Shown here: positions 16,445-22,828 of the stretch, one piece after another | Position numbering within the stretch: the first letter of the stretch is position 1 | Layout of the letters: the number at the start of each line of letters is the position of its first letter | Translations under genes and position numbers: made by a program | Assembly: GCA_904063045.1 (NCBI GenBank) | Contig: CAJFCJ010000006.1 | Span: 1,461,745 to 1,525,744 of the forward strand | From: Dimorphilus gyrociliatus | Taxonomy: Eukaryota > Animalia > Annelida | Reading direction: 5' to 3' | Length of the DNA stretch: 64,000 nucleotides | The notes under the pieces: model-generated | What the model saw: the letters and a program-made list of their open reading frames with translations, nothing else | What the model was told of the DNA's origin: nothing | The model's database searches: none

Positions 16445-17026
16445 TTTACAATTTTACCTGGCGTTTAATATTGCTAAGTGAATCATGAATATAAAAATGC
16501 GCTTTCAGCTAGTCTATATTGGTACGATGAATGTTAATAAGACGAATATTGAAATGAATCAACAGATGTCGCTTCGCAACGATTATGATAATATTTTCAT
16601 GCAGACGCATGTATGGACAGGTGTATTAGCAACTGTAGGCCAGTTGTATAGATAATTGACGAGATTTCGATTAATTATGGAGTGCGTTCTTTGAAAGGGT
16701 TTGTCGATTTTTTTTGCGTCAATCGCCCACAACTTGGATTCACTCTTGTACTTGAATCATTCAATATTCTTTTCAACACCCCGCTGGCGGTTATTATTGT
16801 TCGCGATTATAGAAAAAAAATTAGCATAGTAATAATCATAATTTTTTCCTGCTGTAAAAGCAGGAAGCGGAGAGTTTTGTGCGCACAGAAGTCTTACTAG
16901 ACAACCAAGTCTCCTTTGATGCTCCTAATTATTAGCTGATGTAGGCCCAATAAACCGTTAATGGAATTATATGATGCGTAAGTAGTTACACACATATGTT
17001 TAAATTTTTTTTTTCCATTACAGTAG

Positions 17027-18836
17027 AAACCCGAGAAAGAATGATAACAAAGATTTACGACGAGAAAAAACGATGGAGCTCATTCGACAGCAAGAAGCTC
17101 AGGTTGGTTGTCAATATCGGGCGTCAATTTTTAGCACGTGATTGCGGCGTTTGTTTTCATATTGACGTAAACTCGCTACTGACATTCATTATAGGGTCTA
17201 TGTTATAAAGACTGCAACATAGTGTAAAGCTGTAACATAAAAATGATTAGTTAGCTATTGATCGAAATATTCTGTATGTAATATAACATTAGTTACGATG
17301 TATTATTTATGTGTAACTATACATTGCAGCGTCTGTAGCGTAAAGAGGATTGGCGTGAAGGCTTTTAACGTTTTTTTTATAACCGCTTTCTTCCTGTATA
17401 TATTGACCCGCTAACGTACCATACTCGTCTGATTGACAGTTGTATTGAGTCGTCTTTGAATAATAGGTTGCCAGTACCATTAATAGTCGTATATTTTATT
17501 ACCCATAAGAACGTTTAATACTGAAAAAAAATAGAATAACACAACCAGCGCTGCAGTCGTTCTGTTTGTTTATCGATTTTGTTTGTCAGTGAAGAGAGAT
17601 GTTGGTTCTGGTTGTGATCGGAATAGGCGTAGTAGAATAATGGACGCCACGGCGTCTATAGGCGGCTTATATCGGTTCGCCTTCGGGACGCTTTTAGACG
17701 CGGTGCGCGTTGCCTTGCAGGTTTTCTCTTGTCGTGCTCTGCCACATTGATTTTTGCAGTTGGCGCAGTCGCTCTGCAACATTTTTGCTCAGTCTAGCCT
17801 GTCTCTGCGTCACTACACTGTGTGCTCTTGCTTTTTTTTTTAGCTAAGCAGTGCATTACAGGATACTGTCACTAGTGGTTTGTCTTTATATTTTTTAAAA
17901 TATTTTTATGTTTTTACATTCTTAAAACATATTGCAAACTGGAATGATTTTTTCATTTTGATCAGTTTGCTGTCTGACGTCACGCGTGAGTTGCGTAGCG
18001 ACGCATCTGTCTTTGCCTAGGTTGTGTGTCTTTATTGCAAGGTCGTTATTAGATTAGAATTTGTTTGTTGCAGAAAGCGTTGGAAACGTATGAATTATGG
18101 AAAACGGTCAGTGAGCGAGAAAGGGAAGAGCGGACTGACAGGAATGCCAGAAAGATAGCTTTACAACACAAACTGATTTCGGCTAGGGATGAATTATTTA
18201 AGCGTAAAATTGAAGAAAAAGAGAACACAGAGATTCAGGTACGTCGATTTTTTCTTTATTGTTCAATTCAAGTTCAATCGGGTGTAAGTCGCATAATTCT
18301 GCCTCTCTGTATTGTTAACGGTAATTTTGTACAGCGACCTATCCTAGAGTTGATGAATCGACGTTTTCGCTAGTCGATCAATAAATGGATTTTAATGAAA
18401 AAATGCGTAATATACAATTAGAATTGGGGATGCTGTAAAAGTCTGAATAGGATTTATTATGTAGCAAGAGGACGTGCGTCGACGTTCTAATCGCCCACTG
18501 CTTATTGTTTTAAAATCGACAATATTCTACTGTTGAGTTTTCTAGGCGCATATGTTGAATCGATTTTAATAGTGTGTCGGCTAGAATACGATCGAAACTT
18601 TGCTCAATAGCGGCTTTCGACCATTTTCTAACAAGGACGTGTAAACAAGGCGGAATAGACTATATGTTATATTGCGAGCAATAGTGCCTTGATATCCTTT
18701 TGGGAGCATGGATTAAGTAAGAAAATTTAATTAGGCTAAACGAATGATTAAAGATCTGAATGAAGCGACACGTGTAGGATTCAGTTTTTTGCTCATTAAA
18801 CGCATAAACACACATTCGCGTTATTTATAGAAACAG

Positions 18837-18873
<37 letters not shown>

Positions 18874-20431
18874 TATTCATTCAAACGCAGACATTTTTAA
18901 CCCGATTTTACAGGTGTAGAATTGTGTAGAGGCATTCCTTACATCTGCCGCAGTTTGTGTCTTGTTTCGGATTTTTTAAGTTCTATTGTTTTCCGGTGAA
19001 AGTGACGTCACTGTCCAGTGCGCTTTGGAGCGTAGCGACAGGTGTCGCTCAGGTTCGTTTAGCGGGCGCCAGTTGTTGGTCGGCTGTTGTGACGTCAACA
19101 TAGCGGATTTTTTATGCTTTACTTTGTAAACACTATGGATCGTTTCTTTACCCGTATATTTAATAGTAATTTACTCAGGTAAGTAAGGTGAATACTTCTG
19201 GTCTAGCTGTCGGCCGTCCGTCTGGTCTCTTGTGGTGGCAGAGTTTCCTATGAACATATCTAGCACCACATGAAATCAGTGCTGTCGGTTCGATCACAAC
19301 TGCAAAACGTACTGTTGAGTGTGAACAAGTTACGGATAATAGTTGATTAGTCTTCGTTGAAATACAAATGTGGCACGTTTGAATGGTTTAAGTAAGTATT
19401 TGAATAACATTCGATTAGGCCTGTGTGTACATAAGGCTCAGGACTTCTGAAGGAAAAGACAGTAAAAAAAACGCCACCTAGTGGTCGATGAAAGCTCTAA
19501 ACGGCGGGAATGTACGACAATCATTATAGTGCGTGGTTTAGGCGAAACCACACCCAATTGAGAAAACGTAATGCGATGACTGCTTTCTTATGGTGGTTAT
19601 GTATACTTATCGTAATAGCACCATATGAAATCAGGTCTTGCGCTACGATCAACGCGGTCAATAAACGCCTTTGTTGTTGGCATTGAGCAGCTTGTTGGGT
19701 AACTAGGCAGCGGCGGACCATAAGCTTTTTACGCAAATTGATCGCGTTTTGTCGACGTAGCGCTTTTAATTATTCATGTGGCTATATTTTCGCGTCTCTT
19801 TTACATGAAGTTGCCGATATGTTGATTGATTAATTTGTTAAAGTTTGATGATTTCAGAAACGAGATGAGGAAAAGCAGAAGAAGGCAGATCTTGCAAAAT
19901 CGTTACAGGACATATGCAGAAAATCCATAGGTAAGAAAATTTCAAAGCGCTTCATCGTTTTTATTGTGTTTTTCTGCTTCATATTTTTTATGGGTTTTAG
20001 AGGAGGATAAAAGGCGTAAATTTATCAAAAAAAGGGCTGAGAACTCAGCAATACCACGGAAACAAGACATTGTTCGAAATTCGTCAGGCAACGCGTCCAC
20101 CAAATCGAAGGAAACGGCCTCGTCACAAGTCGACGCTAAAATCGATCAAACGCCTTCTAGTTTGCCACCGCAAACTGACGCCGAATTGGAAGAATTACTC
20201 GACCGAGTAAGGCTAAGGGCGAAAACGACAATCGAGGAAGAAGAAGAAGACGAATATGCAGAAACACCGGATAGCATTGCCTGGTTCGCAAAGCAATTAT
20301 ATGGATTGATGGGAGAAGAAGCGGATTATTTTTTGCATCCGAAAATGGCGCAACGAGTCAGCAAGCCGGTTAATCCGAAATTGCACGCTCAAGGAGGTGA
20401 GTTGCCTGCCTTTCGATCGATAAAGACGTGA
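17027..20431 (+). CDS. Charged coiled-coil hypothetical protein (exons 17027-17102, 18074-18238, 19858-19930, 20001-20431; possible ATG exon 16077-16096); miR-29 host
   Basis: Phase-consistent GT-AG exons give ELIRQQEAQ/KALETYELWK...EIQ/KRDEEKQKK...SI/EEDKRRKF...; E/K/R-rich helical composition. Family not recognised. Confidence 0.55.
18840..18870. repeat. (TA)n microsatellite, representative of many (e.g. about 9340-9370, 30860-30890, 40590-40625, 54094-54130, 55960-55990, 58175-58217, 61572-61607)
   Basis: Directly visible. Confidence 0.95.
19003..19097. promoter_or_regulatory. Pair of palindromic CRE sites (TGACGTCA at 19003 and 19090) upstream of the miR-29 hairpins
   Basis: Two perfect 8-mers 87 nt apart, followed by a strong donor CAG|GTAAGT at 19178/19179. 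Confidence 0.5.
19219..19283 (+). ncRNA. mir-29: miR-29 family pre-miRNA, copy 1 (mature 3p about 19261-19282, UAGCACCACAUGAAAUCAGUG)
   Basis: The 3p arm differs from miR-29b UAGCACCAUUUGAAAUCAGUG only at nt 9-10. The upstream arm CTGGTCTCTTGTGGTGGCAGA (19222-19242) pairs with it to form a roughly 60-nt hairpin. Confidence 0.9.
19472..19484 (-). promoter_or_regulatory. CTCF-like motif (CCACTAGGTGGCG on minus) between the two miR-29 hairpins
   Basis: Near-perfect match to the bilaterian CTCF core CCASYAGRKGGCR. Confidence 0.55.
19578..19637 (+). ncRNA. mir-29: miR-29 family pre-miRNA, copy 2 (mature 3p about 19616-19637, UAGCACCAUAUGAAAUCAGGU)
   Basis: Same seed AGCACCA and GAAAUCAG 3' half. 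The 5p arm ACTGCTTTCTTATGGTGGTTAT (19579-19600) is complementary. Confidence 0.9.
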
Positions 20432-21494
20432 GGAATTGGCGTGACTTGTTGCTAGATAAATTTAGTTTTCTCTGTTTAATTTCGATTACCTGTGTATATC
20501 TGCATACATTTGCGTATGCATACAGGTTAGCATTGCGTAGAAACGGCCACCGAATTCTCATACATATATAATTATCTGCATATCACCGACGTTATATGCG
20601 CTCCCACCTATTTTAATATATAATTTAGACGTGAAAATGTACGTGCCAAACGTAAAATATATATATTTAATATAAATATATAAGCATATATATAGAATAT
20701 ATATATTGGTATATAAACCTATATATTTTTTTGTCAAAAAATATTTTTATGTCAAATATTACTTGTTAAGTGGTAAACGAGAATACTCCTCTTTCGCTTA
20801 ACATATCACCATATCGTATATTCTCTAGGTAGGTTCGTAAAGCGTTTCTATGGAGACGTCTTTAGGATGCTAAGTATACTTAGTTTTGATTTCAAAAGAA
20901 CTATATATACTGTATATGTGTCATATGCTCTCTTAACTGTATTTGGAGACTGAATTTGACTCGAGTTTCTTTGTTATGACAATCGCATAGATGTATGAAA
21001 ACTAAGCAGAGCTTCCGGTTTTTCTCCAATCGATGTGGATGTTGAGTAAACATATAACACGTAATGCTTATAGTGCATGGTGAAATATTGCTTTTGTATT
21101 AAGATGTACGCCGAGAAATTTTGGCCCTTTAGGAAAAAATAATTTGTAAAATACTATATACTTCAATATACTTGACTTCTATATAGAGAATGTATTTCCA
21201 TTAAATTTAATTAAGGTCTAATTTACTTTTACGTGATCTTGCTAGCTCAATTAACGCAAATTAGACGTCGCTATCGGAACGCTCTGGTGTTTCATACCTA
21301 TCGCGACATTGATTTTAGTCTCTCAGCGTCGCTCTTTATTTTTCACCCCAATCGTTAAACCGGGCAAAAGCTTAGTGAAATGTAAATAAAAGAGGTGTGG
21401 ACGTATTTTTGTGTAATATTTGCCTTGGCCTGTTTGCGTAAGAAAGTAGTAAAACGAGGTTGAGAATTAGCATGTATTCCTTTTTTTTTTCAAG

Positions 21495-22828
21495 GAGAAT
21501 CGGGTGTTAAAAAGTTATGGGGAACTTTGCGCAACGAATCAAAAAAGAAGTTAATGGAGGAAGATGAGACTATTCCGCGGGAATTAAAGGTTAGTTTCAT
21601 CACAATGTTACCTATTCTCCACAGGTTTTCACAGATGTTTCATAACAGATGGCATATAGCGCTTTCGTTCGGGAATCTCTAACTAAGGATTGGAAACCGG
21701 TTAAGAGAAATTTCTTTAAGAAGGACGACGTGCCACAAATGCTGCAGTTGATCGATACAAGTAGGATGGAACGGACTAACGCTAGGAAATATCGAGTTGG
21801 TTTTCAAATTGTTTACCAACGTCTAATATTTGATGACTTGTCGACGTCTAGGCAGGTCTTATGTTTCGATCGTCCAATATGAACGAAGATAAAAGCAGAG
21901 TCCTGTTGCATAATAAGGATATGACAGAGCACGACAGCGGCGAAGACGGGGTGGCTAGATTTATTCCAGATAATTATGTAAGTATTTTTTATAAGAGCAT
22001 TAACCCTGTTAATTAATTTAATTGATGTTAGACGCCAGAGGATAAACCAGAATATAAAAAGTGGCTTGTCTCAACGGAGGAGGACGATAAAAGTTTTTCA
22101 GTGGAATCCGAATTAAAACTACTGCTGTCATTAGCGAACGAGAGAGACAGAGCCACAGGTGGACGTCCAAAGATTCTACCTTCCATACACTTTCTAACAG
22201 AAAAAGAATCGACAGTCGATGGGGAATTTACCAAGCGTTGGAAAGAGGCAGATGAAAGGAAGAGGCAGGAAAAGCTAGTCAGGTAGAAGAAAATATATGC
22301 CTATTAATTTCGTCACTAATTTCCCAAAGGCGGTTTACACTGAATCGCTAACACAATCTTTGGCATCTTGTCGAATTTAAATATTTATCATCTTCTCGCC
22401 TTAAATGAGTTTTATTTTACTTACAGCCTTCGAAACTCAAACGGAAATACAGATGGAGCTATAGGTGTGTTCAATCAGCGCCCCCTCTCTGTAGAATCAA
22501 ACCGTTCTACAGAATATGAATGGATATTGACTAGGACAAATAGCTTCTTTTAGTCAATGTCGTTCTTTAAGCACTTTATTTCACTTAAATTTTATTTATT
22601 TTTAATGCATGATGAGATTTTTCACGCATGAAAATCACAACAGAAACGAATATTCGTTGCGTGATAACTGCTGAAGGAGATACATCTGAAGAAATCTGGG
22701 AGCCGTTGTCGATGAATGCCTTGATGGAGTATAGTCGACAGAGAAATGTCGCCGGAAGGGGAGGATTTACGCAGGGTTCGATGAAATATTGGAACTCAGC
22801 ACCTCTTCCAGCCATTCATTCGCAATAG
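21495..22828 (+). CDS. Hypothetical protein (about 6 short exons; start unresolved)
   Basis: Phase-consistent exons 21495-21589, 21649-about 21795, about 21854-21977, about 22032-22283, about 22427-22462 and about 22646-22828. They end in IWEPLSMNALMEYSRQRNVAGRGGFTQGSMKYW...*. Confidence 0.55.

What the first reader, a model, noticed from the sequence alone, without database searches (positions are those of the whole stretch)
19219..19637. Hidden tandem miR-29 cluster in a GC-rich intron, with non-canonical central bases
Seen: a 19-nt near-identical repeat TAGCACCA(C/T)ATGAAATCAG at 19261 and 19616, each with a complementary upstream arm. Known: this is the miR-29 family, whose seed is AGCACCA and which forms tandem pairs in vertebrates and other bilaterians. 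Both copies carry A at position 10, and copy 1 also has C at position 9, unlike the usual U/C-U centre. The ORF track gives no hint of these RNAs.
Basis: partly seen in the sequence, partly recalled or inferred. Interest (0 to 1): 0.75.

Follow-up and report, generated by a model that had tools for sequence, protein, structure and literature searches.

The report
Annelid miR-29 pair in an intron
Two genuine miR-29-family microRNA hairpins sit 355 bases apart inside a long intron of an unnamed gene of a tiny marine worm; they are real but ordinary members of an ancient, well-catalogued family.

Summary
TAGCACCA(C/T)ATGAAATCAG occurs at 19261 and 19616 on the + strand, with 0 matches expected by chance. 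Each copy is the 3' arm of a stable hairpin. Rfam's mir-29 model scores copy 1 at 47.8 bits (threshold 46.7) and copy 2 at 44.8 bits. These are the only two mir-29 matches in the 77.9-Mb genome, which fits the published Dimorphilus gyrociliatus assembly.

Mollusc and Capitella homologues align collinearly with the exons on both sides. This shows that both hairpins lie, in sense, in a 1619-nt intron (18239-19857) of an uncharacterised lophotrochozoan gene. "GC-rich" is only relative: 41% against 33% for the window.

The central bases do differ from the canonical U9-U10. They are not unprecedented:
- C9-A10 is the centre of insect miR-995.
- U9-A10 is the centre of C. elegans miR-83.
- Three environmental animal contigs carry mir-29 hairpins with U9-A10, one of them in a tandem pair.

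The seed and positions 11-19 are unchanged.

Tandem mir-29 pairs are published, including in the annelid Capitella. MirGeneDB 3.0 already covers this species from its genome alone, though I could not view the entry.

The scan had not noted this locus before. It noted other intronic microRNA clusters elsewhere in this genome.

Verdict: real, correctly read, low novelty.

The parts
19217..19285 (+). mir-29 hairpin 1 (the 5' copy)
   Evidence: Rfam RF00074, 47.8 bits, above the gathering score of 46.7, full model 1-70. MFE -32.2 kcal/mol, z -2.9.
19261..19282 (+). Predicted mature 3p of copy 1, UAGCACCACAUGAAAUCAGUGC (seed AGCACCA, C9, A10)
   Evidence: Read from the sequence. 17 of 22 nt are paired, A10 with U19231 and C9 with G19232. 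The ends are inferred, not shown by reads.
19222..19243 (+). Predicted 5p (star) arm of copy 1, approximate ends
   Evidence: Inferred from the MFE structure, assuming 2-nt 3' overhangs.
19574..19640 (+). mir-29 hairpin 2 (the 3' copy)
   Evidence: Rfam RF00074, 44.8 bits, E 1.8e-07, just under the gathering score, full model 1-70. MFE -28.6 kcal/mol, z -3.5.
19616..19637 (+). Predicted mature 3p of copy 2, UAGCACCAUAUGAAAUCAGGUC (seed AGCACCA, U9, A10)
   Evidence: Read from the sequence. 16 of 22 nt are paired, A10 with U19589 and U9 with A19590.
19580..19601 (+). Predicted 5p (star) arm of copy 2, approximate ends
   Evidence: Inferred from the MFE structure and the Rfam alignment.
18239..19857 (+). 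Host-gene intron of 1619 nt (GT...AG) that holds both hairpins
   Evidence: Canonical splice sites, and phase 0 on both sides. Homologue residues matching exons A, B and C are contiguous. The median intron in this species is 66 bp (PMC7854359).
18074..18238 (+). Host exon A
   Evidence: tblastn with Capitella P0007 residues 191-242 (E 0.001) and with bivalve homologues. Translation.
19858..19930 (+). Host exon B
   Evidence: tblastn with P0012 residues 75-99 and P0016 residues 56-80, which directly follow the residues matched to exon A and precede those matched to exon C.
20001..20396 (+). Host exon C, the largest and most conserved exon
   Evidence: HMMER search of 1.84 billion representatives gave 16 hits; the four full-length ones looked up are from Capitella, Crassostrea, Sinanodonta and Mytilus. 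tblastn E about 1e-9.
21495..22828 (+). Remaining host exons: D 21495-21589, E 21649-21795, F 21852-21977, G 22032-22283, and a last exon that includes 22697-22828
   Evidence: Collinear tblastn matches to the same homologues, including their C-terminal WEPLSMNALMEY motif.
19003..19039 (+). Promoter-like module TGACGTCAC-N18-GCGTAGCGAC, 180 nt upstream of hairpin 1; its only other copy in the genome is at 17975-18002
   Evidence: The composite motif occurs exactly twice in the 78-Mb genome, both times here. The CRE 8-mer occurs 9 times in the window against 0.57 expected. Function is not shown.
19176..19184 (+). Consensus 5' splice site CAG|GTAAGT inside the intron, 38 nt upstream of hairpin 1
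   Evidence: Read from the sequence. Its use as the donor of an alternative non-coding first exon is inference.

Best explanation
These are the two MIR-29-family microRNA genes of a small annelid, most likely Dimorphilus gyrociliatus. They are arranged as a same-strand tandem pair, 355 nt start to start, inside a 1.6-kb intron of a conserved but uncharacterised lophotrochozoan protein gene.

The likely mechanism is inferred from established microRNA biology. The hairpins are transcribed in sense, either within the host pre-mRNA or from a promoter inside the intron. Drosha cuts at the base of each roughly 35-bp stem and Dicer cuts at the loop. The 3' arm, UAGCACCA(C/U)AUGAAAUCAG.., is loaded into Argonaute and represses mRNAs that carry sites matching the seed AGCACCA.

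The seed and positions 11-19 are identical to canonical miR-29, so the target range should be that of the family. The A at position 10 pairs with a U of the 5' arm, and the U-U mismatch lies at position 11. In the Rfam consensus the unpaired position is 10. This is a structural variant of the hairpin, not a change of specificity.
For: - The motif is exact and non-random.
- Both hairpins fold better than shuffled sequence.
- The Rfam mir-29 model aligns to both end to end, at 47.8 and 44.8 bits and E 2.6e-08 and 1.8e-07. The sense strand scores far better than the antisense strand (28.5 bits).
- These are the only two matches in the whole genome.
- The paralogues differ by a compensated pair at position 9: C-G in copy 1, U-A in copy 2. 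Across six hairpins, 6 of 21 consensus pairs keep pairing through changes on both sides.
- 16-17 of the 22 3p bases are paired. CNNC motifs lie 15 and 18 nt (hairpin 1) and 6 and 13 nt (hairpin 2) downstream of the predicted 3p end.
- Three environmental contigs hold mir-29 hairpins above threshold with the same U9-A10 3p sequence. One of them is a tandem pair.
- The host intron is supported by collinear homologue matches on both sides.
- Literature: the family includes insect mir-285/995/998 and nematode mir-83, and a duplicated pair is known in Capitella (PMC4238352). MirGeneDB 3.0 annotated this species from its genome (PMC11701709).
Against: - There are no small-RNA reads. MirGeneDB 3.0 states that none exist for this species, so expression, arm choice and the exact ends are all predicted.
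- Copy 2 falls 1.9 bits short of Rfam's gathering score.
- The species name comes from an earlier agent's note. I supported it only through the match in assembly size and scaffold number: 77.9 Mb in 349 contigs, against about 78 Mb in about 350 scaffolds in PMC7854359.
- I could not view the MirGeneDB entry itself.
Confidence: 0.9

Rival explanations
1. The pair is a transcription unit of its own, or an alternative-promoter transcript of the host gene. It would start at the CRE-type module at about 19003-19097, with a short non-coding first exon ending at the CAG|GTAAGT donor at 19178/19179. The microRNAs would then be regulated independently of the host's main promoter.
For: - The composite motif TGACGTCAC-N-GCGTAGCGAC occurs only twice in the genome. 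One copy lies upstream of exon A and the other 180 nt upstream of hairpin 1.
- There are three CRE palindromes within 1.1 kb, and the 8-mer is about 16-fold enriched in the window.
- A consensus 5' splice site lies 38 nt before hairpin 1.
- The genome paper reports ATAC-seq peaks in unusually long introns (PMC7854359).
Against: - There are no transcription-start data here.
- An ATG-started reading frame through that putative exon is out of frame with exon B (my reading), so the exon would have to be non-coding.
- Motif matches alone do not show promoter activity.
- This rival concerns only the route of expression. It is compatible with the main explanation.
Confidence: 0.35
2. Only copy 1 is a working microRNA gene. 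Copy 2 is a decaying duplicate that is no longer processed.
For: - Copy 2 scores below the Rfam gathering threshold, 44.8 against 46.7 bits.
- It has a three-base internal loop at 3p positions 16-18.
Against: - All 19 core bases are kept apart from one compensated change.
- The hairpin has the better z-score, -3.5.
- The basal stem and the downstream CGATCA flank are conserved between the copies.
- 16 of 22 bases are paired.
Confidence: 0.08
3. The repeat and its inverted arms are a chance or repeat-derived structure, with no microRNA function.
For: None found beyond the absence of expression data.
Against: - Shuffles give 0 expected matches.
- The covariance-model E-values are about 1e-7.
- The locus is unique in the genome.
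- Orthologous-looking hairpins occur in other animals' DNA.
Confidence: 0.01

Closest known systems
Capitella teleta mir-29a/mir-29b (annelid MIR-29 pair) and mollusc miR-29a
   Same: Same family, same seed, a duplicated pair in an annelid (PMC4238352). Positions 1-8 and 11-19 are identical to cte/Pm/bgl-miR-29a, UAGCACCAUUUGAAAUCAGUUU (PMC4691125, PMC7328434).
   Different: Both copies here have A instead of U at position 10, and copy 1 also has C at position 9. The last three bases differ. Whether the Capitella pair lies in the orthologous host intron could not be checked.
Insect mir-995 (MIR-29 family, in an intron of cdc2c)
   Same: Same seed and the same C9-A10-U11-G12-A13 centre: UAGCACCACAUGAUUC.. 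(PMC5919617, PMC9170749, PMC5751329). Also intronic in a protein-coding gene (PMC4238352).
   Different: The 3' half differs (AUUCGGCUU against AAUCAGUGC). The host gene is different. It arose within insects according to PMC4238352, so the shared centre is probably convergent.
C. elegans mir-83
   Same: Same seed and the same U9-A10 centre: UAGCACCAUAUAAAUUCAGUAA (PMC4628221).
   Different: The 3' half diverges. It has a separate Rfam model (RF00812), and that model gave no match at E up to 10 in 17000-22000 of the window.
Vertebrate mir-29a/b-1 and mir-29b-2/c clusters
   Same: A same-strand tandem pair of seed-identical hairpins with the mature strand on the 3' arm. The Rfam consensus fits.
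   Different: The vertebrate centre is U-C or U-U (for example UAGCACCAUCUGAAAUCGGUUA, PMC4628221). From my own knowledge, vertebrate clusters lie in non-coding host transcripts rather than in an intron of a coding gene.
Environmental mir-29 hairpins L004, L006, L007 (unidentified animals)
   Same: The 3p sequence UAGCACCAUAUGAAAUCAGUG is 20-21 of 22 identical to the window copies. L006 and L007 share the 5' arm core CUUGUGGUG with copy 1. L007 has a same-strand tandem pair.
   Different: In L007 the downstream partner is canonical (U10) and lies 2.5 kb away. No host-gene exons were detectable on those contigs.

Membership tests
MIR-29 microRNA family (Rfam RF00074 mir-29; MirGeneDB MIR-29) | Seed AGCACCA at positions 2-8 of the mature strand | tested here: met
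   Both copies start UAGCACCA.
MIR-29 microRNA family (Rfam RF00074 mir-29; MirGeneDB MIR-29) | Mature strand on the 3' arm of a roughly 60-70 nt hairpin, with at least 16 paired bases between the arms | tested here: met
   17 and 16 of the 22 3p bases are paired. Hairpin z-scores are -2.9 and -3.5.
MIR-29 microRNA family (Rfam RF00074 mir-29; MirGeneDB MIR-29) | Covariance-model score at or above Rfam's gathering score (46.7 bits): copy 1 | tested here: met
   47.8 bits, full-length match.
MIR-29 microRNA family (Rfam RF00074 mir-29; MirGeneDB MIR-29) | Covariance-model score at or above Rfam's gathering score (46.7 bits): copy 2 | tested here: inconclusive
   44.8 bits, E 1.8e-07, full-length match. 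This is 1.9 bits under the curated cut-off. The loss comes from the loop and from pairs marked non-standard in the alignment, not from the mature arm.
MIR-29 microRNA family (Rfam RF00074 mir-29; MirGeneDB MIR-29) | Conserved 3' half, GAAAUCAG at positions 12-19 | tested here: met
   Identical in both copies to the Rfam consensus and to cte/Pm/bgl-miR-29a (PMC4691125, PMC7328434).
MIR-29 microRNA family (Rfam RF00074 mir-29; MirGeneDB MIR-29) | Expression: small-RNA reads with uniform 5' ends from both arms and 2-nt offsets | not testable with these tools
   No read data are available here. MirGeneDB 3.0 says there are no small-RNA reads for Dimorphilus (PMC11701709).
Intronic (host-gene-embedded) microRNA cluster | Both hairpins lie between two exons of one gene, on the gene's strand | tested here: met
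   Exons A, B and C match contiguous residues of bivalve homologues: P0012 residues 27-74, 75-99 and 99-216. The splice sites are canonical and in phase. No transcript data were available.

The most novel reading that the evidence does not exclude
This miniaturised annelid may have no canonical (U10) miR-29 at all. Both of its genes are closer to the A10-type paralogue seen upstream in an environmental tandem pair (34 of 41 arm positions) than to the canonical downstream type (29-31 of 41). This suggests that the canonical paralogue was lost or overwritten by gene conversion. In addition, the pair may be driven by a duplicated CRE-type promoter module, unique in the genome, inside the host intron. 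Finally, the microRNA-host pairing with this uncharacterised gene could be an unrecognised conserved lophotrochozoan synteny.
Probability: 0.25. Interest if true: 0.3.

Novelty: already known. Interest (0 to 1): 0.15.

Why it matters
It matters little beyond correct annotation. The locus confirms that a worm with one of the smallest animal genomes keeps the ancient miR-29 pair, and keeps it inside one of its rare long introns.

Three modest points might interest a microRNA specialist:
- Both copies share the A10 centre, which moves the central mismatch of the hairpin by one position.
- The host is a conserved but unnamed lophotrochozoan gene.
- A promoter-like module found only twice in the genome flanks the cluster.

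None of these changes what is known about how miR-29 works.

Tried and rejected
**Literature**
- Exact 19-mers of both copies found no paper.
- Supplements of the MirGeneDB 3.0 and Platynereis papers are not held, so I could not confirm the database entry for this species.

**Other hairpins in and near the intron**
- The strongest hairpin, 17643-17711 on the + strand, is not better than shuffles (z -1.4).
- A minus-strand hairpin at about 18576-18638 has z -3.8 but no Rfam match. I did not follow it.

**Host gene**
- Pfam on each exon gave nothing.
- The ESM Atlas gave only sub-threshold bacterial look-alikes.
- The word search found one 86%-identical ORF, P0001, from a Logan assembly.
- tblastn of the host exons and their homologues against the three environmental mir-29 contigs found nothing significant.

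**Other**
- Six of the nine metagenome 19-mer matches are chance hits without hairpins.
- The exon-A-like upstream exon 17024-17102 in the other frame does not splice in frame. An ATG at 17073-17102 (MELIRQQEAQ) does, but it has no homologue support.
- I took none of the contigs for human.

Full report
**Observation**

The 19-nt motif TAGCACCAYATGAAATCAG occurs exactly twice in the window. It is at 19261-19279 (C at position 9) and at 19616-19634 (T at position 9), both on the + strand. Dinucleotide-preserving shuffles give none. The direct repeat extends to 36 nt at 81% identity and includes a shared CGATCA block downstream of each copy.

Each copy is the 3' arm of a hairpin:

| Region | MFE (kcal/mol) | z-score |
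|---|---|---|
| 19205-19300 | -32.2 | -2.9 |
| 19560-19655 | -28.6 | -3.5 |

. In a scan of all 90-nt windows on both strands of 16500-22500, these are the second and third most stable single hairpins.

**Family assignment**

- At gathering thresholds over the whole 64-kb window, Rfam reports a single hit: mir-29 (RF00074) at 19217-19285 on the + strand, 47.8 bits against a cut-off of 46.7.
- A permissive local scan adds the second hairpin at 19574-19640, 44.8 bits, E 1.8e-07, also a full-length match.
- The reverse strands score only 28.5 bits each.
- The same model run over the window's whole genome (77,897,245 bases, 349 contigs) finds only these two places.
- In the predicted 22-nt 3' arms, 17 and 16 bases are paired.
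- CNNC motifs lie 15 and 18 nt downstream of the predicted 3p end of hairpin 1, and 6 and 13 nt downstream for hairpin 2.
- The two paralogues differ at position 9 by a compensated pair: C-G in copy 1 and U-A in copy 2.

No small-RNA data are available, so the mature ends and arm choice are inferred.

**Organism**

I could not test this by sequence. The assembly size and contig number do match the published assembly: about 78 Mb in about 350 scaffolds (PMC7854359). GC of about 32% is given in PMC12257675. The closest homologues of the host gene are from an annelid and from bivalves. The window is not human, and I took none of the fetched contigs for human.

**The "non-canonical" centre**

Relative to the Rfam consensus (CACCAuUuGAA) and to the Capitella, pearl-oyster and Biomphalaria miR-29a (UAGCACCAUUUGAAAUCAGUUU; PMC4691125, PMC7328434), both copies have A for U at position 10. 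Copy 1 also has C for U at position 9. The variant is recurrent in the family, however:

- Insect miR-995 reads UAGCACCACAUGAUUC.. (PMC5919617, PMC9170749, PMC5751329).
- C. elegans miR-83 reads UAGCACCAUAUAAAUUCAGUAA (PMC4628221).
- Both belong to the mir-29 family according to PMC4238352.

A scan of public metagenome contigs for the A10 motif gave nine exact matches. Three are bona fide mir-29 hairpins, scoring 52.5-66.6 bits, with 3p UAGCACCAUAUGAAAUCAGUG.. (L004, L006, L007). The other six are chance matches without hairpins.

L007 carries a same-strand tandem pair. The A10 type lies upstream, and a canonical U10 hairpin (55.2 bits) lies 2.5 kb downstream.

A six-sequence alignment gives a common stem in which 6 of 21 pairs keep pairing through double changes. 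In all five A10 hairpins the A pairs with a U of the 5' arm. In both window copies the U-U mismatch lies at position 11, whereas the Rfam consensus leaves position 10 unpaired.

Over 41 arm positions, both window copies are closer to the A10 type (34/41) than to the canonical type (29-31/41). This hints that both derive from the A10 paralogue, but the sample is too small to settle it.

The seed (positions 2-8) and positions 11-19 are unchanged. From established knowledge of microRNA targeting, no change of target range is expected.

**Genomic context**

A multi-exon gene lies on the + strand. I searched its exons one by one by reference.

- Pfam finds nothing in any exon.
- The ESM Atlas gives nothing usable.
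- The word search with the largest exon (20003-20395) finds only one 86%-identical 164-aa ORF from a Logan assembly (P0001).
- The exhaustive HMMER search finds 16 weak but consistent hits.
- Four of the full-length hits were looked up. They are "uncharacterized" proteins of Capitella teleta (ELT90193.1), Crassostrea angulata, Sinanodonta woodiana and Mytilus species. They have no Pfam domain.

tblastn of these proteins on the window is collinear with the following exons:

| Exon | Coordinates |
|---|---|
| A | 18074-18238 |
| B | 19858-19930 |
| C | 20001-20396 |
| D | 21495-21589 |
| E | 21649-21795 |
| F | 21852-21977 |
| G | 22032-22283 |
| last | includes 22697-22828 |

In the bivalve proteins the residues matched to A, B and C are contiguous, for example P0012 residues 27-74, 75-99 and 99-216. 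The splice sites are canonical and both junctions are in phase 0.

Therefore 18239-19857 is a 1619-nt intron that holds both hairpins in sense orientation. This is about 25 times the species' median intron of 66 bp (PMC7854359). Its GC content is 38.7%, and 40.8% for the finding's span, against 33.2% for the window. It is richer than its surroundings but not GC-rich.

**Route of expression (inferred)**

Co-transcription with the host and Drosha processing from the intron is the default model. Several features suggest an internal promoter as well:

- The palindrome TGACGTCA occurs nine times in the window against 0.57 expected.
- Three of those nine flank this region, at 17975, 19003 and 19090.
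- The composite TGACGTCAC-N(5-25)-GCGTAGCGAC occurs only twice in the whole genome, at 17975-18002 and 19003-19039.
- A consensus donor CAG|GTAAGT lies at 19178/19179, 38 nt before hairpin 1.

An internal promoter with a short non-coding first exon is therefore plausible. It needs the published CAGE and ATAC data to test.

**Comparison with what is known**

- The mir-29 family is ancient.
- Duplicated pairs are described in deuterostomes and in the annelid Capitella (PMC4238352).
- Intronic family members are known in insects (mir-995 in cdc2c, mir-998 in E2f; PMC4238352, PMC4109884).
- MirGeneDB 3.0 added Dimorphilus gyrociliatus as a genome-only species with predicted reads (PMC11701709).

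A standard covariance model finds both hairpins, so they are very probably already in that database. I could not see the entry, because the supplements are not held.

The genome paper itself does not discuss microRNAs. Earlier notes of this scan describe other conserved microRNA clusters in introns elsewhere in this genome, but none at this locus.

**Verdict**

The finding is real and correctly interpreted, and it is ordinary. What remains open is small:
- whether both copies derive from the A10 paralogue;
- whether the host-microRNA pairing is conserved in other lophotrochozoans;
- whether the duplicated promoter-like module drives the cluster.

Noticed in passing
window 17975-18002 and 19003-19039 (+); also 19090-19097: The composite motif TGACGTCAC-N(5-25)-GCGTAGCGAC occurs only twice in the 78-Mb genome. 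Both copies are in this locus, 1028 nt apart on the same strand. The CRE palindrome TGACGTCA alone is about 16-fold enriched in the window (9 found against 0.57 expected).
   Followed up: partly
window 17073-22828 (+): The host gene is an orthologue of uncharacterised lophotrochozoan proteins (Capitella ELT90193.1, Crassostrea angulata XP_052677549.1, Mytilus LOC134720616). It has no Pfam domain and carries conserved motifs ADYFLHPK and WEPLSMNAL.EY. It has three introns of about 1-1.6 kb in a genome whose median intron is 66 bp.
   Followed up: partly
window ~18576-18638 (-): A compact hairpin on the minus strand inside the same intron folds much better than shuffles (-24.4 kcal/mol, z -3.8). 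It has no Rfam match.
   Followed up: no
window 17643-17711 (+): A GC-rich hairpin (-34.3 kcal/mol) in the upstream long intron. It is not better than shuffles (z -1.4), so it is probably compositional.
   Followed up: yes
L007:3829-3895 (-) and L007:6427-6500 (-): A marine metagenome contig from an unidentified animal holds a tandem mir-29 pair: an A10-type hairpin upstream and a canonical U10 hairpin 2.5 kb downstream. L006 has a near-identical A10-type hairpin.
   Followed up: partly
window 18822-18880: An (AT)n microsatellite of about 40 nt inside the host intron. It gave spurious weak mir-297 and mir-466 matches.
   Followed up: yes
P0001 (Logan assembly, 164 aa): An ORF 86% identical to host exon C, including read-through into the intron, exists in public read assemblies. 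This implies a close relative or a divergent strain of this worm.
   Followed up: no
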